From the NCBI RefSeq assembly GCF_001194135.2, contig NC_068982.1, positions 28,833,426 to 28,897,425 on the forward strand: DNA of 64,000 nt. Reading direction: 5' to 3'. The position numbers were made by a program, and so were the translations under genes. The notes under the pieces are model-generated. The model worked only from the letters and a program-made list of their open reading frames with translations. It was not told the origin of the DNA and did not search any database. Origin of the DNA: Octopus bimaculoides. Taxonomy: Eukaryota. Every line of letters starts with the position of its first letter. Positions within the stretch are counted from its first letter, which is position 1. Of this stretch, positions 5,337 to 26,079 are shown piece by piece.

Positions 5337-5995
5337 TTGGTAGAATCGTCAGCACGCCAGGCAAAAATGATTAGTTGCATTTCGTCCGTCCTCATGTTCT
5401 AAGTTCAAATTCCGCCGAGGTCGACTTAGCCTTTCATCATTACGGGATCGATAAAAATAGATACCAGTGAAACACTGGGCTCGATGTGTTCGACTAGTCT
5501 CCTCCCCCGAAATTCCAGGCCTTGTGCCTATAGTAGAAGGAACTATTATTATTATTAAGGCGGCGAGCTGGCAGGAGCTTTAACACGCCGGGCTTAGCGG
5601 TATTTCGTCTGTCGCTACGTTCTGAGTTCAAATTTCGCCGAGGTCGATTTTGCATTCCATCCTTTCGGGGGTCGATTAAATAGGTGCCAATTATACACTG
5701 GGATCGATGTAACCGATTTAATCCCTTCCCCCAAATTTCAGGCCTTGTGCCTATAGTAGAAAGGATTATTATTATTAAGAAGAAGACGGTGAGCTGGCAG
5801 AATCGTTAGCGCGCCGTGCAAAGTGCTTAGCAGCATTTCGTCTGTCGCTACTCTACGTTCTGAGTTCAAATTCCGCCGAAGTCGACTTTGCCTTCCATCC
5901 TTTCAGAGTCGACAAATCAAGTGGCAGTGAAACACTGGGGGCGATGTTATCAACTAGTCCCTTCCTACCAGATTTCAGGCCTTCTGTCTTTAGTT
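5337..5995 (+). mobile_element. Head-to-tail array of 3 tRNA-derived SINEs (octopus OK/Nin-type) joined by (ATT)n
   Basis: Units start about 5337, 5559 and 5785 with head GGCGGCGAGCTGGCAGAATCGTTAG, B-box-like GAGTTCAAATTCC, core GAGGTCGACTTTGCCTTTCATCCTTTCGGGGTCGATAAA and tail GGCCTTGTGCCTATAGTAGAAAGG. Confidence 0.9.
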
Positions 5996-6779
5996 GTTCA
6001 GACCCAGTTTTGGTAGTAATCTATACATTCAGGAAGAAGTCACTTGATGGGTATCGGCAATGAAACCGATCCGAATGATACGTATATGTATATATTGGGT
6101 TAAAGCATAAACCCGGTGTTATGGAATTTTTCTAAATAGGCTACAGTCAATTGTATGAACCTTAGTTTTTTGATACTGTATTTCATCGGCCGTTGACAGG
6201 ATGAAAACAAACACGACCGTGGTAGGTTTCGAACTCAGGACTGAATCGGCCGGTACTTAAATGATTCTGTCCCATGTTTTGTAAATATTAATGAATGGTT
6301 CATCCCCCATGTTATATAAATATTCATGAATGGTTCATCTTTAAAAATTAGGTTAATCACCCGATCTTACATATTTAGTTAATTATATAATTGCGTGTAT
6401 TTTTTCGTGAATGTTTGTGAATGTGTGCCCATGTATGTATACACACACAAATACACATTTATAAAAAGTCAATTACTTCAGCTTATGGAAAGATATAGCG
6501 TATATTTTAGCCTATTAACATTATTGTCATTCATCAATGTTGTTATTATTGTTGCTGTTAATGTTTTTATTTTATACGCACGTCATTCTTAAATCGGCAG
6601 GGTTATAAATGGAAGCATTCATAACCGTGACGAGGTCATGATTTAGACAGTTTATATTAAACCCCATTATCTAATATCCTTTTATTACAAGACAATACAG
6701 TGTGATCTGAGAGAGAGATTTCGTTCCCAGTTTTAGATCGAGTAACGACATTGAAGTTTTCTTATTAGTTTTTGTAAAG

Positions 6780-7359: not shown

Positions 7360-9924
7360 CACCCCAGATCCGAACACTGACACCTGATTGACTATGTCAT
7401 CACACACGCTCGAACCTGCAGGATGTGGAAATCACCAGAGTTATGCACGGTACCAACTGTTGGACCGACCATCGCTCGGTCCAATTTCGGCTACGCTTGC
7501 GAATTCGTCCTCCTATCCGCAACCAAAAGCTTAAGCAGAAGCTAAATGTTGGAAACCTGCAATCGCGTGAAGCCCGCCAGAGACTGGCAGTAAGACTGGA
7601 ACAGTAGTTTGCCGAACTCCCTGATGTCGGGACCGGACCAAATGATGGACAAACTCTGACGTCAGAGTGGGACACTCTAGCAACCACTATCACTAACGCT
7701 GCCAAAGATATACTTGGTGTTCTGAATAGACGTCATCAGGACTAGTTTGATGACAACTCGACGGAGATCCACTCGCTCCTACGTGAGAAGAATGCTGCAC
7801 ACAGTAGACATCTCCGTCAACCAACAGCAGCCAACAACAGACATTGAGTAAGCCTCCGTTTTAAGGTCCAGCGAAAACTTACGACAATGCAGAACTGGTG
7901 GAAGACTAAAGCACAAGAAATACAAGGCTATGCTGACAAACAACATCCAAGCTTTCTAAGAATTCATAAAGACTGCATACGGTCCACTTAGAGGATCCTT
8001 CTACCTCGTATGGAACAATGATTCAACATCACTCATCAAGGACCGAGATGGCATTCTGTCACGATGGGATGAGCATTTCAACATCATCCTCAACCGTAGA
8101 AACCCCATAGAAACCCCTTCTTTTCTTGACAACATCCCTTCACTGCCACTCATCGATTGTCTAGATGATACACCAACCTTTGGAGAAACTGAATCTGTGA
8201 TAAATGGCCTCAAGTTGAACAAGGCATCCGGCATTGACCATCTGCCAGCCGAGATCTTGAGATATGACGGCCGGTCCCTCAAAACCTGTATCCATGATTT
8301 CATCTACAGACCATGGACTTCCCACTGCGTGCTTCAACAACGGAAAGATGCCAACATTGTTGCCATATATAAAAACAAAGGTGACAGAGCAGGCGGTAGA
8401 AATAGCCGAGACATCTTGATTTCACTTGCTGGTAAGGTCCTTGCTCGAGTCCTCCTATCACGCCTTCTGAGGCATGTGGCCCATGTTGCAGTGCCTGAAA
8501 CCCAATGTGGTTTCCGAAGCATCCGCTCGACTGTTGACATGGTCTTTGTCGCACGTCTTCTCCAGGAGAAATGCCGTGAACAAAACCACTCCCTTTACAT
8601 GACTTTTAACCAAAGCCTTCGACACCATTGACCGTGATGTTCTGTGGGAAACCCTGACAAAATTTGGCTGCCCACCAAATTTTCTTGCCATTTTGAAGGA
8701 CTTACACAACGGAACGATAGCCAGAGTCGTCTATAAAGGCACCCAGTCTGACTTCTTCCCGTTCCAAGTCGGTGTCAAGCAAGGGTGTGTACTTGCCCCG
8801 GTCATCTTTCAACTTCTACATGGCATCCGTATCCCTCCACGCCAGGCATTCATTGAAGCTGAAAGATGCAATAACTATCAGGTACCGGCCGAATGGCAGC
8901 ATTTTCAATCTGAGGCGCCTGAAATCTGTAACAAAGACGTCATCTCAACACATCTTCGACTTGCAATATGCAGATGATATAGCACTTGTCAGCCATAGCT
9001 CTGCTGGCCTTCAAAGTCTCTTGGACTATATACCAGATGCATACAGCCATGCTGACCTAGACATCAATACCAAGAAGACGGAAATCCTCCAACAGCCTTG
9101 TTCCTCCGACACCAACCCATGCGCCTTCCATGTTGAAGATGCGACAATTGCTAATGTAAACCAATTCACTACCCTGGCTCATTCTTCAACAACACCGTCG
9201 ATCTGACAGACGATAGTCAGTGCTGTATTCGTCTTGCCTCTGCTGCGTTTGGTCGGATAAGTACTCGCGCCCTTCTCAACAAAAATATCACCATCAGTTG
9301 CTATATGGCTGCGAGTCTTGGGTGTCCTACCGGCGTCATATCAAGACGCTCGTGCGGTTTCATATCTCTAGCCTTCAACAACTCCTTGGCTTACACAAGG
9401 GGAACAGGATCCATCATGCTGAGATACGTGACCGAACAAGCAGCCAGTCATTGGAGGTAACCATCGATAACCGCCAACTCAGATGGGCAGGGCATGTCAT
9501 TCGAATGTCTTCAACTCGATTGCCCCACTTTGTTATGTACGGTGAACTTGAAGATGGAAGACAGCTGTGTCGGTGGCCAGCACAAGCGCTTTAAAGATCA
9601 CCTGAAGGCAACGCTGAAAAAGTGACATATCCCTCCCGACAGTCTCGAATCAATGGCTGCAGATTTCACTAGCTGGTGCGACTCATTCAAGACTAGCACC
9701 ACCAGAATCCAAGAAGACCTACTGCAGAGTGAAGTGGCACGCCGCGCCCGGCGGCACGTGCAGAACCTTGGAAGTCAACAGCAGCCAGGCTTTACATGCT
9801 CCACCTGCGGACGTATCTGTCTTTCCAGAATCGGACTTCATAATCATCAGAGGTCACATAACTATAAATGTTGTTCGGGAAAAGTACTCATCGCTTCGCG
9901 CTGTTCACGAAATGATGAATGATG
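7360..9924 (+). mobile_element. 5'-truncated, frameshifted RTE-clade LINE (APE C-terminus, RT, C-terminal C2H2 finger) inserted into a SINE
   Basis: Motifs HPRSEH.HLIDYVI..CWTDHR (APE); TQCGFRSIRSTVDMVF, GVKQGCVLAP, LQYADD (RT); FTCSTCGRICLSRIGLHNHQRSH. Tail aatgatgaatgatg. TSD aacttctg(a/t)gtt at 7328-7339 and 9925-9936. Multiple stops and frameshifts. Confidence 0.95.
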
Positions 9925-10004
9925 AACTTCTGTGTTCAAATCTCGTTACATCAAATTTGCCTTTCATCCCTTCGGGTAAAAATAATAGTGGCTTCAAATG
10001 TTGG

Positions 10005-11155
10005 CCCAAAACCGGCGATTTGGGGACGTGGGGAGAGTAAGCTGATTACATTGACTCCAATGCTCAACTGGTACTTATTTGATCGGCCTCAGTTCTTAAC
10101 TGGTAGTTATTTTATCTTCCTGGAAAGAATGTAAAGCAAACTCAACATCGATGGAATTTGAAGGCAAAGAGCCAGAAGAAATTATGCTAAGCATTTTGTC
10201 TGACGCACTAACGATTCTGCCAGCTCACCACCTTAATAATTTTTTCTAATTTCCACACAATTCCAGCAATTTTAAATTGGTGGGAGTCCATTACAGTGAT
10301 CCTAGCATTCAGCAGGTACTTTATTTTATCGATCCCGAAAGGATGAAAGATAAAGTTAATGTCGGCAGAATTTGAACTCAGTACGTGAAAAAACCGCTAA
10401 ACGCGAAGAAATGCCGCTAAGCATGTTGTCTGTAGCACTAACGGTTCTGCCAGCTTGCTGCTACCGCTAATAATAATAATCCTTTCTACTATAGGCTCAA
10501 GGCCTGAAATTTGGGGGAGGGGGACATTCGATTACATCGAGCCCTGTGTACTGGTACTTAATTTATCAACCCTGAAAGGATGAAAAGCAAAGTCAACTTC
10601 GGCGGAATTTGAACTCAGAACGTGAAGACGGACGAAATGCCACTAAGCATTTTCTCCGGCGTGCTAAAGATGTTGTCCGCTCGCAGCCTTAAAAATTATG
10701 GAACGTTTCACAAATTTGTGTGTAACTTTTGCGCAGGGGTCATGCTAATCTTCTCTGTATCCTCCCAGTTTTGTCGATATCCTCGACAACTTTATTTGAC
10801 TAATTAATCATTTTATCGAATCCGGAGGGATGAAAGGCAACGATGAGAGCAGCGTGATTTAAAATCAGAGCGTAGAGACGGAGCAAATGTCATGAAGCAT
10901 TTTGTCCGACACTTTAATGATACTACCAATCCACCGCCGTTGATGATAATTGGTTCTAATCTAGGCACAAGGCCAGTAATTTTTGGGGAAGGGATTAATC
11001 GATAAACAATTGAACCAGTGCTTTATTCGTATGTTCTTTTATCAACTCTGCAAGAATGTAAGGCAAAATTGACCTCGGAAAGATTTTAACTCAAAACGTA
11101 ATGTATCAGAGTTTTGTTCGACGCTCTACCCATTTTGCTAATCGACTACTCTAAT
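10005..11155 (-). mobile_element. Array of about 5 OK/Nin-type SINEs on the minus strand, containing a U6 fragment
   Basis: Reverse-complement head/core motifs repeated (e.g. gaatttgaactcag, ggatgaaaagcaaagtc), with taataataat linkers. Confidence 0.85.
10691..10772 (-). pseudogene. U6: 5'-truncated U6 snRNA retrocopy fused to a SINE body
   Basis: Minus strand AAAACTGGGAGGATACAGAGAAGATTAGCATGACCCCTGCGCAAAAGTTACACACAAATTTGTGAAACGTTCCATAATTTTT aligns by eye to roughly nt 26-107 of canonical U6 (11 mismatches, 1 indel); ACAGAG box intact, 5' stem-loop absent. Confidence 0.93.
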
Positions 11156-14204: not shown

Positions 14205-14450
14205 GCGGGGTATATGTATGTCAGTTTATGTACATAGATATGTACGTGTTTGTGGCTGTAGGCAGTTGTTGTCTTCACTATTTGACAACCGGTGTAGACA
14301 CACCCAAAATCAGACGGTTCGGAAGAATTGATGCATAGAGTAAGTTGCAGATTTAAAATAAGTATTGGGATCGGTTCGATCCACTAACCCCAGAATGTAT
14401 TACTCCAGCATGGCCTGAGTTCAATAATTAGCTCAAATAAAACTCTAAAA
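14050..14450 (+). mobile_element. Degenerate OR1-like SINE with internal (TA)/(TG) run
   Basis: Head gtcgaatggttaaggagttcgcttg; agccttgtgagtgaatttgatagagggaaactg; cttgacaaccggtgt-like segment. Confidence 0.65.
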
Positions 14451-14838
14451 GGTACATTTATATATACATATATCTGTGTGTGTGTGTGTGTGTATATATA
14501 TATGTATATGTATATATGTATATGTATATATATATNNNNNNNNNNNNNNNNNNNNNNNNNNNNNNNNNNNNNNNNNNNNNNNNNNNNNNNNNNNNNNNNN
14601 NNNNNNNNNNNNNNNNNNNNNNNNNNNNNNNNNNNNNNNNNNNNNNNNNNNNNNNNNNNNNNNNNNNNNNNNNNNNNNNNNNNNNNNNNNNNNNNNNNNN
14701 NNNNNNNNNNNNNNNNNNNNNNNNNNNNNNNNNNNNNNNNNNNNNNNNNNNNNNNNNNNNNNNNNNNNNNNNNNNNNNNNNNNNNNNNNNNNNNNNNNNN
14801 NNNNNNNNNNNNNNNNNNNNNNNNNNNNNNNNNNNNNN

Positions 14839-14905
14839 GCCTCGGGCCGACTAAAGCCTTGTGAGTGTATTTGGTAGGCGAAAACTGAAAGAAGCCCGTC
14901 GTGTA
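14839..14905 (+). mobile_element. OR1-like SINE body fragment after gap
   Basis: gcctcgggccgactaaagccttgtgagtgtatttggtaggcgaaaactgaaagaagcccgtcg, matching 32560-32620. Confidence 0.75.
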
Positions 14906-18384: not shown

Positions 18385-18435
<51 letters not shown>

Positions 18436-18621
18436 NNNNNNNNNNNNNNNNNNNNNNNNNNNNNNNNNNNNNNNNNNNNNNNNNNNNNNNNNNNNNNNNN
18501 NNNNNNNNNNNNNNNNNNNNNNNNNNNNNNNNNNNNNNNNNNNNNNNNNNNNNNNNNNNNNNNNNNNNNNNNNNNNNNNNNNNNNNNNNNNNNNNNNNNN
18601 NNNNNNNNNNNNNNNNNNNNN

Positions 18622-18686
<65 letters not shown>

Positions 18687-23200: not shown

Positions 23201-23486
23201 AAGCAATCCTCTACTTTTTTTAAATTCTACTTAGAAAGATGATGTTGGAGAGAAAAGTTTGTCCTTCACGTGATATTCATGAGACTGGCGAAAATGGCGC
23301 ACTTGAATGGGACTGCTTTGAGAATCTGTGTTAGTACACAGTGTAGTTATAGTTTAGTGGAGTTCTTTAATAGAATCTAGAAACCTATCCTCCAGTTGAG
23401 ATTTCTCATTTCATAGCTTTTGGAAACATTTGTTTCCTATCACTGCTCTGTTTCTGCGTTCACACCACCGTTTTTATAATTAAACC

Positions 23487-23487
<1 letters not shown>

Positions 23488-23527
<40 letters not shown>

Positions 23528-23711
23528 AAGGCGCCGAGCTGGCAGAATCGTTAGCACGCCTGGCGAAACGCTTAGCGGTATTTCGCCAGCCGCTACGTTC
23601 TGAGTGCATTCTTCGGGGTCGATAAATTAAGTACCAGTGAAACAATGGTGCTGATGTAATTGACTAGTCCCCTCCCCAAAAATTCCAGGTCTTGTGCCTT
23701 TGATAGAAAGG

Positions 23712-23758
<47 letters not shown>

Positions 23759-24380
23759 GAAGGCGGTGAGCTGGCAGAATCGTTAGCGCGCTGGACGAAA
23801 TGCTTACCGGTATTTCGCCCGTCGCTACATTCTAAATTAAAATTCCGCCGAGGTCAACTTTGCCTTTCATACTTTCGGGATCGATAAATCAAGAACCAGT
23901 GAAACACTGAGGTCGATGTAATAGACTTAACCGCCCCCAACAAAAAAAAATGTCAGGCCTTGTGGCTATGGTAGAGTAGAATATTATTATTATTGTTGTT
24001 GTTAGGCGGCGAGCAGGCAGAATTGTAAGCACGCTGGGCGCAATGCTTAGCGGTATCCGTCCGTCTTCACTGCTAAGGTCGACTTTGCCTTTCATCCTGT
24101 AATCGACTAATCCCCTCCCCCAAAATTGCTGCTCTTGTGGCAAAATTTGAAACCAGTATTATCATTATTGATGTTGTTGTTATTGTTAAGGGCGATGAAT
24201 CGGTAGAATCATTTATGGCTTGGATAAAATGCTTTGCCTAACTATTCCGGCTCTTTATATTTTGAATTCAAATCTCCTAAAATCAGCTTTGCCTAAAATA
24301 AAATAGAATAGCGCTCAACGACTAAGCTCGATTTAGTCGACTAATCTCTCCTCCGAAATTTATGGCTTTTTGTCTATGTT
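23488..24380 (+). mobile_element. (ATT)n-linked array of about 4 OK/Nin-type SINEs
   Basis: Heads at about 23529, 23761, 24003 and 24188, each preceded by an ATT/GTT trinucleotide run. Confidence 0.88.
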
Positions 24381-26079
24381 AAAAAGAATAATTCCTATTG
24401 TTATTTGGGTGGTAAATTTAATCTGTCGCCTGGTGTAATACAATTAATTACCTTCCACCTTGGGTGTGTTTAGCAGAGTTAATCCTGTTTCAAGTATTCA
24501 GGCTAGGTCTTCAGCTTCATGATACCTTCGTCTCTATCTCCCACTAGTCTAGGTGACCCTTTGAAGGAACATGTGTACTACTTTCCTCATTGCAAAGAGA
24601 AAAAAAAACTGCAATTGTTAACCCATATCTAGCAATATCGTAAAGCTAACCTTTAGGATTGGGTAATTAATCTCCGCAAAATTCTAATGTGTTGAGTACT
24701 TCCATATTTTTATACGGCAGAACATGAACACACGTTCGTACACACCCATATATGCACCCATTCACCCAAAACTTTAATGCATAAAAGAAGAAAAACAGAG
24801 GAAGAAACAAACAAGTAGATAACAGAAAAAACTTGGATGTTTTTTATATCTATTATGATTTCCATTAATAACAGTATATAATATTTTTTTGTCGGCATGT
24901 TTGTATAATTCAAGGTTTTGAGGCTAAAATAATACACATGTGGAATTTTAGGTCATCTAAATAAGAATAATGTTTTTTATTAAAATAATTTTGAAAATGT
25001 TTCAATAGATAATAATCTAAAGGAGCAAGATAAGAATAATAAGGAGGGTGTGGAAGGCTTTTTTAAAGTTAGCTTTTGAATATTTGCAGAAGCGATTTTA
25101 GCAGCACAGAACCAGCATACAGATATAGTGGAAATTCCTCTGTGCAAAGCAGTATTTAGTTGAATTAGTTGTGTATGAAATAGCTCCGACGTTGAAGAAT
25201 TTTTGCCCTAGATCATCTGTATACGGGAAGAGCTTATGATGAAAGAAATTCCAACACGACTATCACACTCTTTTTTTTATAAACTACGGGAGACCTAGTG
25301 TATCCATGATTGTATTCGGTTGATTCGGTTTCATTTTTCTAGCAAGTCAAGTGCTTAATTACGTAGAGATTTCTTCAATGCTGATGCTGATGAAAATAAT
25401 AAGGAGAGGACAGGTGGAGAAAAACATATATATGTTGTGCATCTACTACATTATTTGCTGATTGTAAAATGATTTCAGGTTATTCAGTTGAACAAACTAT
25501 TGATTTCTCACTGTATCAGAAAACCATAATTTAAAGTGTGGGACAGAAGCAATCCATTAATATTGGTATCTTTCAATATATAACTAGTATTTAGGCGACG
25601 AGATGGTAGAACTGTTACTTCGCCAAACAAAACCCTTAGTAGCTTTTCTTTCCCTTGAGCTCGACTTTTCCTGCCATCCTTGTGCCAAAATTAGAAAGAA
25701 ATATATACTTAGTATTCCTTTTAGAGGCTCTTTAAGAGCAATGAAAGGCAGAAAGTCTGGAGTGTTAAATGAACGATATTTAAACTTGCGTTTAACCGTC
25801 TCCAAAACTTCAGTGCAAAAACATTTCACTATTGGCATAGAATATAATTTCCAGAGTTAATAAAAATCAATGGTTTTTCTGTTTGAAATCCTAAGTGGTT
25901 ATAAAGAAATTTCAAATTATTAGCGTTGAATCTTTGGGAGTGTTAGAAACGTTTTCTATACATGTTTTCTAGAAGTATCATTGCTGATACTTGTTAAATA
26001 TGCAAATATTTTTCAGTCGGTGGTTTGGTAGTGAAGCAGAGCATTGACGACGAGGAGGATGGATACATGGATGTATTTC

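What the first reader, a model, noticed from the sequence alone, without database searches (positions are those of the whole stretch)
10691..10938. SINE-U6 snRNA chimera: U6 replaces the SINE tail
Seen (minus strand): a SINE head and core (10938 to 10773) run to ...GATATCGAC, the point where other copies in this window switch between alternative tails. There the sequence joins the 3' 82 nt of U6 (ACAGAG box, 3' U-tract), which abuts the head of the next SINE. Established: mammalian U6-L1 chimeras have full-length U6 at the 5' side; this has the opposite polarity. Inference: RT primed on U6 RNA and switched to SINE RNA, or this is one copy of an unrecognised SINE subfamily with a U6-derived tail.
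Basis: partly seen in the sequence, partly recalled or inferred. Interest (0 to 1): 0.7.

Follow-up and report, generated by a model that had tools for sequence, protein, structure and literature searches.

The report
U6 pseudogene fragment between two octopod SINEs
A decayed 82-base copy of the 3' part of U6 spliceosomal RNA sits between two SINE repeats in an octopod genome; it is most likely an ordinary by-product of retrotransposition (U6 copied onto the front of the downstream SINE), not a new reverse-polarity chimera or a SINE family with a U6 tail.

Summary
On the minus strand, a tRNA-derived SINE head and core (10941-10773) stops at the core hairpin ...GTCGAGGATATCGAC. It is followed by U6 nt 27-107 plus its T-tract (10772-10691; Rfam U6, 66.4 bits). 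The T-tract touches the first base of a full-length SINE (10690-10468).

The evidence fits the downstream pairing better.
- The U6 oligo-T joins the exact 5' terminus of SINE B (AAGG..., fixed by target-site duplications of solitary copies).
- U6 decay (12/81) matches SINE B (18/162). It is lower than the upstream SINE (49/165; Fisher p=0.012), whose Pol III boxes are also decayed.
- 5'-truncated U6 upstream of SINEs or LINEs with simple-repeat tails is already described in platypus, lizard and opossum (PMC4476161).

The upstream junction is then either a DNA join into an older SINE that lost its tail, or a second template jump. The upstream SINE keeps 9 of 16 CpGs, and the junction lies at the core/tail boundary, so the second option stays open.

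The family hypothesis could not be tested, because no octopod genome was searchable. Within the window this is 1 of 42 SINE matches. Verdict: a new member of a known kind, of low to moderate interest.

The parts
10773..10941 (-). SINE X: full 5' end, tRNA-like head and conserved core. It ends at the core hairpin and lacks the ~60-nt LINE-type tail and the (ATT)n.
   Evidence: Alignments; nhmmer 71.5 bits over HMM positions 7-176. Identity to consensus is 70.3% (49/165; 26 transitions, 23 transversions). 9/16 CpGs are retained. A box has 3/11 and B box 4/13 positions changed. Its variants are mostly private.
10773..10787 (-). Core hairpin GTCGA-GGATA-TCGAC (consensus GTCGAT-GTA-ATCGAC). Its 3' base is the last SINE base before U6.
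   Evidence: Read directly from the sequence. RNA fold gives -8.2 kcal/mol with z=-3.8 for X, and -8.8 kcal/mol for the consensus.
10691..10772 (-). U6 snRNA retro-sequence, nt 27-107, with ACAGAGA box and terminal T5. It is 5'-truncated (no 5' stem-loop) and decayed.
   Evidence: Rfam RF00026, 66.4 bits. Local alignment to human U6 covers nt 27-107. 12/81 mismatches, 9 transitions and 3 transversions, 2/5 CpGs kept.
10468..10690 (-). SINE B: full-length copy starting at the family's true 5' end (AAGG...), with type-1 tail and (ATT)4. Its first base touches the U6 T-tract.
   Evidence: nhmmer 230 bits, HMM positions 3-232. Identity to consensus 88.9%. The family's 5' terminus is defined by target-site duplications of solitary copies.
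10942..11139 (-). SINE A: older copy upstream. Its degenerate tail ATTATCATCA precedes X.
   Evidence: nhmmer 90 bits; 71.7% identity to consensus.
9978..10467 (-). SINEs C and D: the downstream members of the same head-to-tail array.
   Evidence: nhmmer matches 10461->10234, 10237->10081 and 10088->9978; 79% and 78% identity.

Best explanation
The U6 piece belongs with the downstream SINE.

Inferred mechanism. A LINE reverse transcriptase that starts at (AUU)n tails was copying SINE B RNA at a nick in the (ATT)n tail of an older SINE (X). It reached the 5' end of the SINE RNA and jumped end-to-end onto the 3' oligo-U of a U6 snRNA. It then copied U6 back to nt 27 and stopped.

Inferred resolution. 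The 5' end of this U6-SINE cDNA was joined to the target DNA upstream of the nick, at the 3' base of X's core hairpin. About 60 bp of X's tail was lost in the process. This happened either at integration or through a later small deletion that also removed U6 nt 1-26.

Result. The product is a dead, decaying composite with no function: [old SINE X without tail][U6 27-107][SINE B](ATT)n.

Shown: the three segments, both junctions to the base, the relative divergences, and the family's 5' terminus, target-site duplications and tail.

Inferred: the order of events, the template jump, and the deletion.
For: (1) The U6 T5 is followed with no spacer by AAGGCTGCG. The SINE RNA 5' end is AAGG. This is fixed by solitary copies with 7-18 bp target-site duplications at 40408, 49320, 58640 and 60004. 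An independent insertion into an (ATT)n target would be expected to leave repeat units or a duplication between U6 and B. None is present.

(2) Decay. U6 has 12/81 mismatches (non-CpG 9/71). B has 18/162 (12/130); the difference from U6 gives p=0.41. X has 49/165 (41/133); the difference from U6 gives p=0.012, and 0.004 for non-CpG sites.

(3) X's A and B boxes carry 7/24 changes, including invariant bases of both boxes. That matches the other old copies; young copies carry 0-2. Any transcribed source must have had intact boxes, so these changes occurred after insertion.

(4) X's variants are private. No window copy is closer to X than the consensus is.

(5) The SINE/LINE system here is of the simple-repeat-tailed, tail-sharing ('stringent') type. 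SINE tails end in (ATT)n. The type-3 tail is shared over ~55 nt plus (ATT)n with the sequence 130-280 bp downstream of the LINE zf-RVT ORF at 48570-49085.

(6) Precedent. With L2, RTE and CR1 LINEs and their SINEs (Mon-1, AnolisSINE2, RTESINE1), U6 chimeras have a 5'-truncated U6 upstream of the element and small or no target-site duplications (PMC4476161 sec. 10).
Against: (1) X keeps 9/16 consensus CpGs. That resembles young copies (10-14/16) and not the other old copies (about 24%). X could therefore be young and derive from a divergent source.

(2) The X/U6 junction sits at the end of the conserved core, where tails differ between SINE families. A DNA-level join makes this a coincidence, unless the hairpin or the short ACTAAAA-like microhomology set the end point.

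(3) No target-site duplication flanks U6+B, and an extra ~60-bp loss must be assumed.

(4) Only one locus was seen. No orthologous empty site or second example could be fetched.
Confidence: 0.45

Rival explanations
1. Tripartite chimera from two template jumps in one retrotransposition event. The RT copied SINE B RNA, jumped to the U6 3' end, left U6 at nt 27 and jumped onto a SINE RNA that ended at, or was entered at, the core hairpin. It then copied that RNA to its 5' end. The whole X-U6-B unit landed in SINE A's (ATT)n tail. The U6-to-B pairing and the standard polarity still hold, and the X/U6 junction is an RNA-level recombination.
For: The junction lies exactly at the 3' base of the core hairpin, the place where LINE-derived tails start in other families. 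X keeps 9/16 CpGs, as young copies do. X has a complete 5' end preceded by A's tail, and B is followed by (ATT)4, which is compatible with an (ATT)n target duplication and needs no deletion. Double jumps are documented in Magnaporthe and mammals (PMC2104539).
Against: X is 30% diverged against 11-15% for U6 and B. X's Pol III boxes are decayed (7/24), which a freshly copied SINE RNA should not show. No related copy of such a divergent source family appears among the 37 other aligned copies. An internal or truncated acceptor RNA is required.
Confidence: 0.2
2. The RT primed on the U-tract of U6 RNA at an (ATT)n nick just upstream of a pre-existing SINE B, then switched to SINE RNA. This gives a reverse-polarity SINE-U6 chimera.
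For: The U6 3' end (ATAATTTTT) resembles the (ATT)n target or primer, so mispriming is conceivable. The junction is at the core/tail boundary, and X retains many CpGs.
Against: The nick would have to fall exactly at B's first base, with no target duplication; the family makes 7-18 bp duplications. X would have to be younger than B, yet it is far more diverged. Tail-recognising LINEs are not expected to start on U6; PMC4476161 finds no stand-alone U6 retrocopies where only such LINEs act.
Confidence: 0.1
3. One copy of an unrecognised SINE subfamily whose tail is U6-derived. It would be transcribed from the SINE's Pol III boxes and terminated at the U6 T-tract.
For: X differs from every other copy in the window, as a separate family would, and it retains CpGs. 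Tail exchange at this boundary has occurred repeatedly in octopod SINEs.
Against: It is 1 of 42 SINE matches and the only U6 match in 64 kb. There is no LINE-type tail or (ATT)n after U6, so no handle for the partner LINE. The Pol III boxes are decayed. There are no target-site duplications. The exact abutment with B would be a coincidence.
Confidence: 0.08
4. Independent neighbours. Either a 5'-truncated U6 retrocopy inserted on its own next to B, or B later inserted at the (ATT)n-like U6 3' end (ATAATTTTT against the ATTATTATT after B, 7/9 identical). In the second case U6 may originally have been fused to SINE C. A purely DNA-level deletion between a SINE and a nearby U6 pseudogene is also possible.
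For: The SINE's targets begin with AATATT-like motifs. U6 decay is also statistically compatible with C and D (p=0.2-0.5).
Against: More separate events and exact coincidences at two junctions are needed. A stand-alone U6 retrocopy is unexpected with a tail-recognising LINE.
Confidence: 0.12

Closest known systems
U6 chimeras made by simple-repeat-tailed ('stringent') LINEs and their SINEs: platypus U6-L2 and U6-Mon-1, Anolis U6-AnolisSINE2 / L2 / RTE, opossum U6-RTESINE1, turkey U6-CR1 (Doucet et al. 2015, PMC4476161)
   Same: A 5'-truncated U6 lies upstream, its 3' end fused to the retroelement. The partner ends in a simple repeat. Target-site duplications are small or absent. The origin is attributed to a template switch from the element's RNA to U6.
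   Different: This is a mollusc (octopod) rather than a vertebrate. The partner SINE is full-length, so the jump was from its very 5' end. The upstream junction falls inside another SINE. Only one example was seen, and recurrence was not tested.
Mammalian U6/L1 chimeras (Buzdin et al. 2002; Moldovan et al. 2019, PMC6789731)
   Same: The polarity is the same: U6 at the 5' side, joined through its oligo-U end to a retrotransposed sequence.
   Different: In mammals U6 is full-length, L1 is 5'-truncated and polyadenylated, and 12-16 bp duplications are present. RtcB ligation of U6 to RNA fragments is proposed there. Here the partner begins at its native 5' end, which in my reading fits a template jump better than ligation (inference, not tested).
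Bi- and tripartite chimeric retrogenes from multiple template jumps (Gogvadze et al. 2007, PMC2104539)
   Same: Directly fused copies of different RNAs in one orientation. This is the model for the SINE-U6-SINE reading.
   Different: Those cases have shared target-site duplications and coeval parts. Here the upstream part looks older.
SINEU, SINEs with snRNA-derived parts (Kojima 2015, PMC4494074)
   Same: snRNA sequence is incorporated into SINEs by template switching.
   Different: SINEU uses U1 and U2 as heads and is a proven multi-copy family. Here U6 would be a tail, and no family has been shown.

Membership tests
U6 / retroelement template-switch chimera | The U6 segment runs to its native 3' oligo-U end | tested here: met
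   ...GTTCCATAATTTTT at 10704-10691 aligns through U6 nt 107.
U6 / retroelement template-switch chimera | The U6 3' end is fused directly, in the same orientation, to a LINE or SINE sequence lying 3' of it | tested here: met
   The junction reads T5|AAGGCTGCG. AAGG is the SINE's true 5' terminus, fixed by target-site duplications of solitary copies.
U6 / retroelement template-switch chimera | The 3' partner ends in the tail used by its LINE (poly(A) or a simple repeat) | tested here: met
   B ends in the type-1 tail plus (ATT)4. A LINE 3' end in the window also ends in (ATT)n.
U6 / retroelement template-switch chimera | Target-site duplication flanking the whole chimera | tested here: inconclusive
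   No duplicate of ...GGATATCGAC appears after B's tail. Microsatellite context and a presumed target deletion hide any signal. Doucet et al. report small or no duplications for non-L1 chimeras.
U6 / retroelement template-switch chimera | U6 and its partner are of the same age | tested here: met
   12/81 against 18/162 mismatches, p=0.41. Statistical power is low; C and D are also compatible.
U6 / retroelement template-switch chimera | Independent examples elsewhere in the genome with variable U6 5' ends | not testable with these tools
   No octopod genome can be searched. The SINE probe gave 0 hits in metagenome contigs and genome contigs.
SINE (sub)family with a U6-derived tail | Several copies with the same junction in different flanks | not testable with these tools
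   Within the window it is 1 of 42 SINE matches and the only U6 hit. The junction scan of metagenomes gave 0 hits but has no power.
SINE (sub)family with a U6-derived tail | A 3' end that the partner LINE can use (LINE-derived tail or terminal simple repeat) | tested here: not met
   U6 is followed directly by the next SINE's head, with no tail and no (ATT)n.
SINE (sub)family with a U6-derived tail | Head with usable Pol III A and B boxes, allowing for the copy's age | tested here: not met
   A box has 3/11 and B box 4/13 positions changed, including the C of TGGC and the G and C of GTTC.
Functional U6 snRNA gene | Complete RNA with the 5' stem-loop and intact conserved core | tested here: not met
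   Nt 1-26 are absent. There are 12 substitutions, several of them in the internal stem-loop region. The Rfam score passes its threshold on the 3' 81 nt alone.
CORE-SINE superfamily (octopus OR1/OR2, MIR, Mon-1) | Central domain homologous to the CORE sequence | tested here: inconclusive
No curated SINE library was available.

The most novel reading that the evidence does not exclude
The hairpin that ends the octopod SINE core is a preferred acceptor point for template switching, because it acts as a stable 3' end of processed SINE RNA. Any RNA being copied there, U6 included, can become a new SINE 'tail'. This locus would then be either a snapshot of that tail-exchange process or one member of an unrecognised U6-tailed SINE lineage.
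Probability: 0.12. Interest if true: 0.55.

Novelty: new member of a known kind. Interest (0 to 1): 0.25.

Why it matters
Read in the ordinary polarity, this locus is evidence that the (ATT)n-tailed LINE machinery of octopods jumps between templates at RNA 5' ends, as vertebrate L1, L2, RTE and CR1 do.

In the literature I could search I found no report of U6 chimeras in cephalopods. U6 chimeras could therefore serve there as datable markers of LINE activity, as they do in mammals.

The locus also gives a practical lesson for the scan. In head-to-tail repeat arrays, a foreign segment must be tested against both neighbours before a new polarity is claimed.

The locus has no likely function.

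Tried and rejected
(1) Finding other copies through spurious ORFs across the junction. The 61-aa ORF 10622-10807(+) is not on record. A 40-aa junction peptide found no candidates. Neighbouring ORFs are not on record either.

(2) DNA scans. The junction pattern gave 0 hits in metagenome contigs. The positive-control SINE 20-mer has 6 exact hits in the window but 0 hits in metagenome contigs and genome contigs. These nulls therefore carry no weight.

(3) Sampling octopod DNA through LINE proteins. RT hits come from non-octopod contigs that lack the SINE. Only one octopod locus was obtained, Argonauta hians L005 (20.8 kb). It has 12 SINE core/tail matches and no U6.

(4) A functional U6 gene is rejected: no 5' stem-loop, and the sequence is decayed.

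(5) A simple U6 insertion into a SINE is rejected: the rest of X's tail is not found after U6 or after B.

(6) B's tail being X's old tail is rejected. From the alignment, B's tail is close to the consensus, as the rest of B is.

(7) CORE-SINE membership tested against a remembered MIR sequence gave no significant result.

(8) An X-like subfamily in the window was sought and none found. X has no match in the Argonauta locus.

Full report
WHAT IS THERE. All coordinates refer to the minus strand. The region 11139->9978 is a head-to-tail array of five copies of the window's dominant repeat, here called A, X, B, C and D. That repeat is a ~227-nt tRNA-derived SINE. Its consensus is AAGGCGGCGAGCTGGCAGAATCG...GAGTTCAAATTCCGCC...TTGCCTTTCATCCTTTCGGGGTCGATAAA.TAAGTACCAG...CTGGGGTCGATGTAATCGAC T..CCCCTCCCCCAAAATTTCAGGCCTTGTGCCTATAGTAGAAAGG(ATT)n. 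An HMM built from 13 copies finds 42 matches in the 64 kb window.

Copy X (10941->10773) follows this consensus from its first bases to ...GTTGTCGAGGATATCGAC. That is the core hairpin, a 5-bp stem in X and a 6-bp stem in the consensus. X has none of the ~60-nt tail.

The next 82 nt (10772->10691) are U6 nt 27-107, with the ACAGAGA box and a T5 end. Rfam U6 scores 66.4 bits against a gathering score of 44. There is no other U6 match in the window, even at E<=10, and no U6 5' sequence anywhere. Rfam's extension of its alignment to model position 1 is forced onto the SINE hairpin.

The base after the T-tract (10690) is the first base of copy B, which is full-length and ends in (ATT)4 at 10469.

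HOW THIS SINE BEHAVES. Solitary copies carry target-site duplications of about 7-18 bp. These begin with an AATATT-like motif and fix the SINE's 5' terminus at AAGG. Examples are the copies at 40408, 49320, 58640 and 60004. Many copies sit in same-orientation arrays separated by (ATT)n, at 5338-6001, 23525-24399 and 52472-53711. This is what is expected if new copies prime in the (ATT)n tails of old ones.

The conserved core, up to the hairpin, is shared in three places:
- a second SINE family in the window that has a different head;
- a copy with a different tail at 37410->37176;
- SINEs of Argonauta hians (locus L005).

That alternative tail is shared over ~55 nt plus (ATT)n with the sequence 130-280 bp downstream of a LINE zf-RVT ORF (48570-49085, minus strand). 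The system is therefore of the tail-sharing, simple-repeat-ended type.

The LINE-derived part starts within 5-11 nt after ATCGAC.

WHICH NEIGHBOUR DOES U6 BELONG TO? Four results point to B instead.

(i) The U6 oligo-T is joined, without a single spacer base, to the exact 5' terminus of B. This is the signature of an end-to-end jump from the 5' end of one RNA to the 3' end of another. An independent insertion into an (ATT)n target would be expected to leave repeat units or a target duplication between the two.

(ii) Decay. U6 differs from canonical U6 at 12/81 positions (9/71 outside CpGs). B differs from the SINE consensus at 18/162 (12/130). X differs at 49/165 (41/133). U6 against B gives p=0.41. 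U6 against X gives p=0.012, and p=0.004 outside CpGs. Human U6 was used as the reference, so any octopod-specific U6 bases would only lower the U6 figure.

(iii) X's Pol III A and B boxes carry 7 changes in 24 positions, including invariant bases. The other old copies look the same, whereas young copies carry 0-2. A transcribed source must have had working boxes, so this is decay after insertion.

(iv) X's variants are private. No window copy is closer to X than the consensus is.

PRECEDENT. Doucet et al. 2015 (PMC4476161, section 10) surveyed U6 chimeras in vertebrates whose LINEs recognise their own 3' tail and start at a simple repeat. Those LINEs and partner SINEs are platypus L2 and its SINE Mon-1, Anolis L2/RTE and AnolisSINE2, opossum RTE/RTESINE1 and turkey CR1. 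In the platypus L2 set the U6 segment is almost always 5'-truncated and lies upstream of the element. Target-site duplications are small or absent. Stand-alone U6 retrocopies are not seen there. The arrangement U6(27-107)-SINE B-(ATT)n matches that description. It is the ordinary polarity.

THE UPSTREAM JUNCTION. Two readings remain.

(a) DNA-level join. The U6-B cDNA was joined into an older SINE X whose (ATT)n tail was the target, and X's tail was lost. A later small deletion that also removed U6 nt 1-26 would give the same result. From my own knowledge, target deletions and microhomology at 5' junctions are well known for L1. U6 nt 24-30 (ACTAAAA) resembles the sequence after the hairpin in some copies (GACTAAAAC / GACTTAAC).

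(b) Second template jump. The RT jumped from U6 nt 27 onto a SINE RNA at the hairpin, giving a tripartite X-U6-B insertion in A's tail. Double jumps are documented in PMC2104539.

Reading (b) is kept alive by two facts. X retains 9 of 16 consensus CpGs, like young copies (10-14 of 16) and unlike the other old copies (about 24%). The junction coincides with the core/tail boundary. Reading (a) is favoured by X's overall divergence, its decayed boxes and its lack of relatives.

My estimates are:
- (a) 0.45;
- (b) 0.20;
- a U6-tailed family 0.08;
- independent neighbours or a plain DNA deletion 0.12;
- the remainder unassigned.

The statement that U6 was acquired in the ordinary polarity from the downstream SINE therefore carries about 0.65.

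WHAT COULD NOT BE DONE. The decisive test is a count of the two junctions in octopod genomes. The public DNA collections on hand contain no octopod SINE: the control probe gave 0 hits. The earlier null for the junction is therefore uninformative. Attempts to reach octopod assemblies through ORFs or LINE proteins gave only one 20.8-kb Argonauta locus.

The window's organism is an octopod other than Argonauta. This rests on the shared SINE core and on the LINE ORF being 58% identical to an Argonauta hians protein.

VERDICT. The feature is real and correctly located. The striking part of the interpretation, reverse polarity with U6 as a SINE tail, is probably an artefact of pairing U6 with the wrong neighbour. 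The most likely reading is a decayed, non-functional U6-SINE template-switch chimera of a kind already known in vertebrates, here in a cephalopod. It counts as a new member of a known kind, of low to moderate interest. The family or hot-spot reading keeps a probability of roughly 0.1.

Noticed in passing
window 48290-48440 (-) with 48570-49085 (-); 37176-37262 (-); L005 12080-12190, 4640-4760, 15150-15260: The sequence 130-280 bp downstream of a LINE zf-RVT ORF shares ~55 nt plus (ATT)n with the alternative ('type 3') SINE tail. It also shares them with the tails of Argonauta hians SINEs. This looks like a LINE/SINE tail-sharing pair conserved across octopods.
   Followed up: partly
window 45340-45640 (-), 49420-49720 (+), 32700-32900 (+), 34900-35100 (+), 14300-14480 (+), ~40570 (-): A second SINE family has an unrelated head and a ...CCCAGCATGGCCGCAGTCAAATGACTGAAAC... 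tail. It shares only the ~50-nt central domain (CGATAGAATAAGTAC.AG...CTGGGGTCGAT..TCGACTAAAAC) with the main SINE. This suggests a modular SINE superfamily.
   Followed up: partly
window 5338-6001, 23480-24399, 46547-47149, 52440-53711: SINEs lie in same-orientation head-to-tail arrays separated by long pure (ATT)n. In two arrays the most diverged copy is the last one (24190, 53509), not the first. Arrays therefore do not simply grow downstream from a founder.
   Followed up: partly
window 10237-9978 (-): SINE D gives two overlapping HMM matches (positions 3-164 and 125-231). This points to an internal duplication of about 40 nt around the core.
   Followed up: no
window 53509-53711 (+): Like X, this copy is strongly diverged (72.5% identity) yet keeps 10 of 15 consensus CpGs. 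CpG loss is therefore not a uniform clock for these SINEs.
   Followed up: no
window 7400-10040 (+): A degenerate, frame-shifted LINE lies next to the array, with RT ORFs at 8197-9594. Its closest database relatives (50-64% aa identity) are on ENA and JGI metagenome contigs that lack the octopod SINE.
   Followed up: partly
protein P0047: A protein that NCBI labels as from a Herbaspirillum MAG ('zinc-binding domain-containing protein', 1.8-kb contig) is 65% identical to the octopod LINE zf-RVT ORF. It is probably animal LINE contamination in a bacterial bin.
   Followed up: no
window-wide, e.g. 2470-2940, 14530-14850, 18430-18640, 37400-37800, 55980-56290, 62570-63110: The window holds 2318 N in many gaps, nearly all flanked by microsatellites (TG/CA, TC, ATT). 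The numerous sub-threshold Rfam 'mir-297 / mir-3149 / mir-466' matches fall on such simple repeats and are noise.
   Followed up: no
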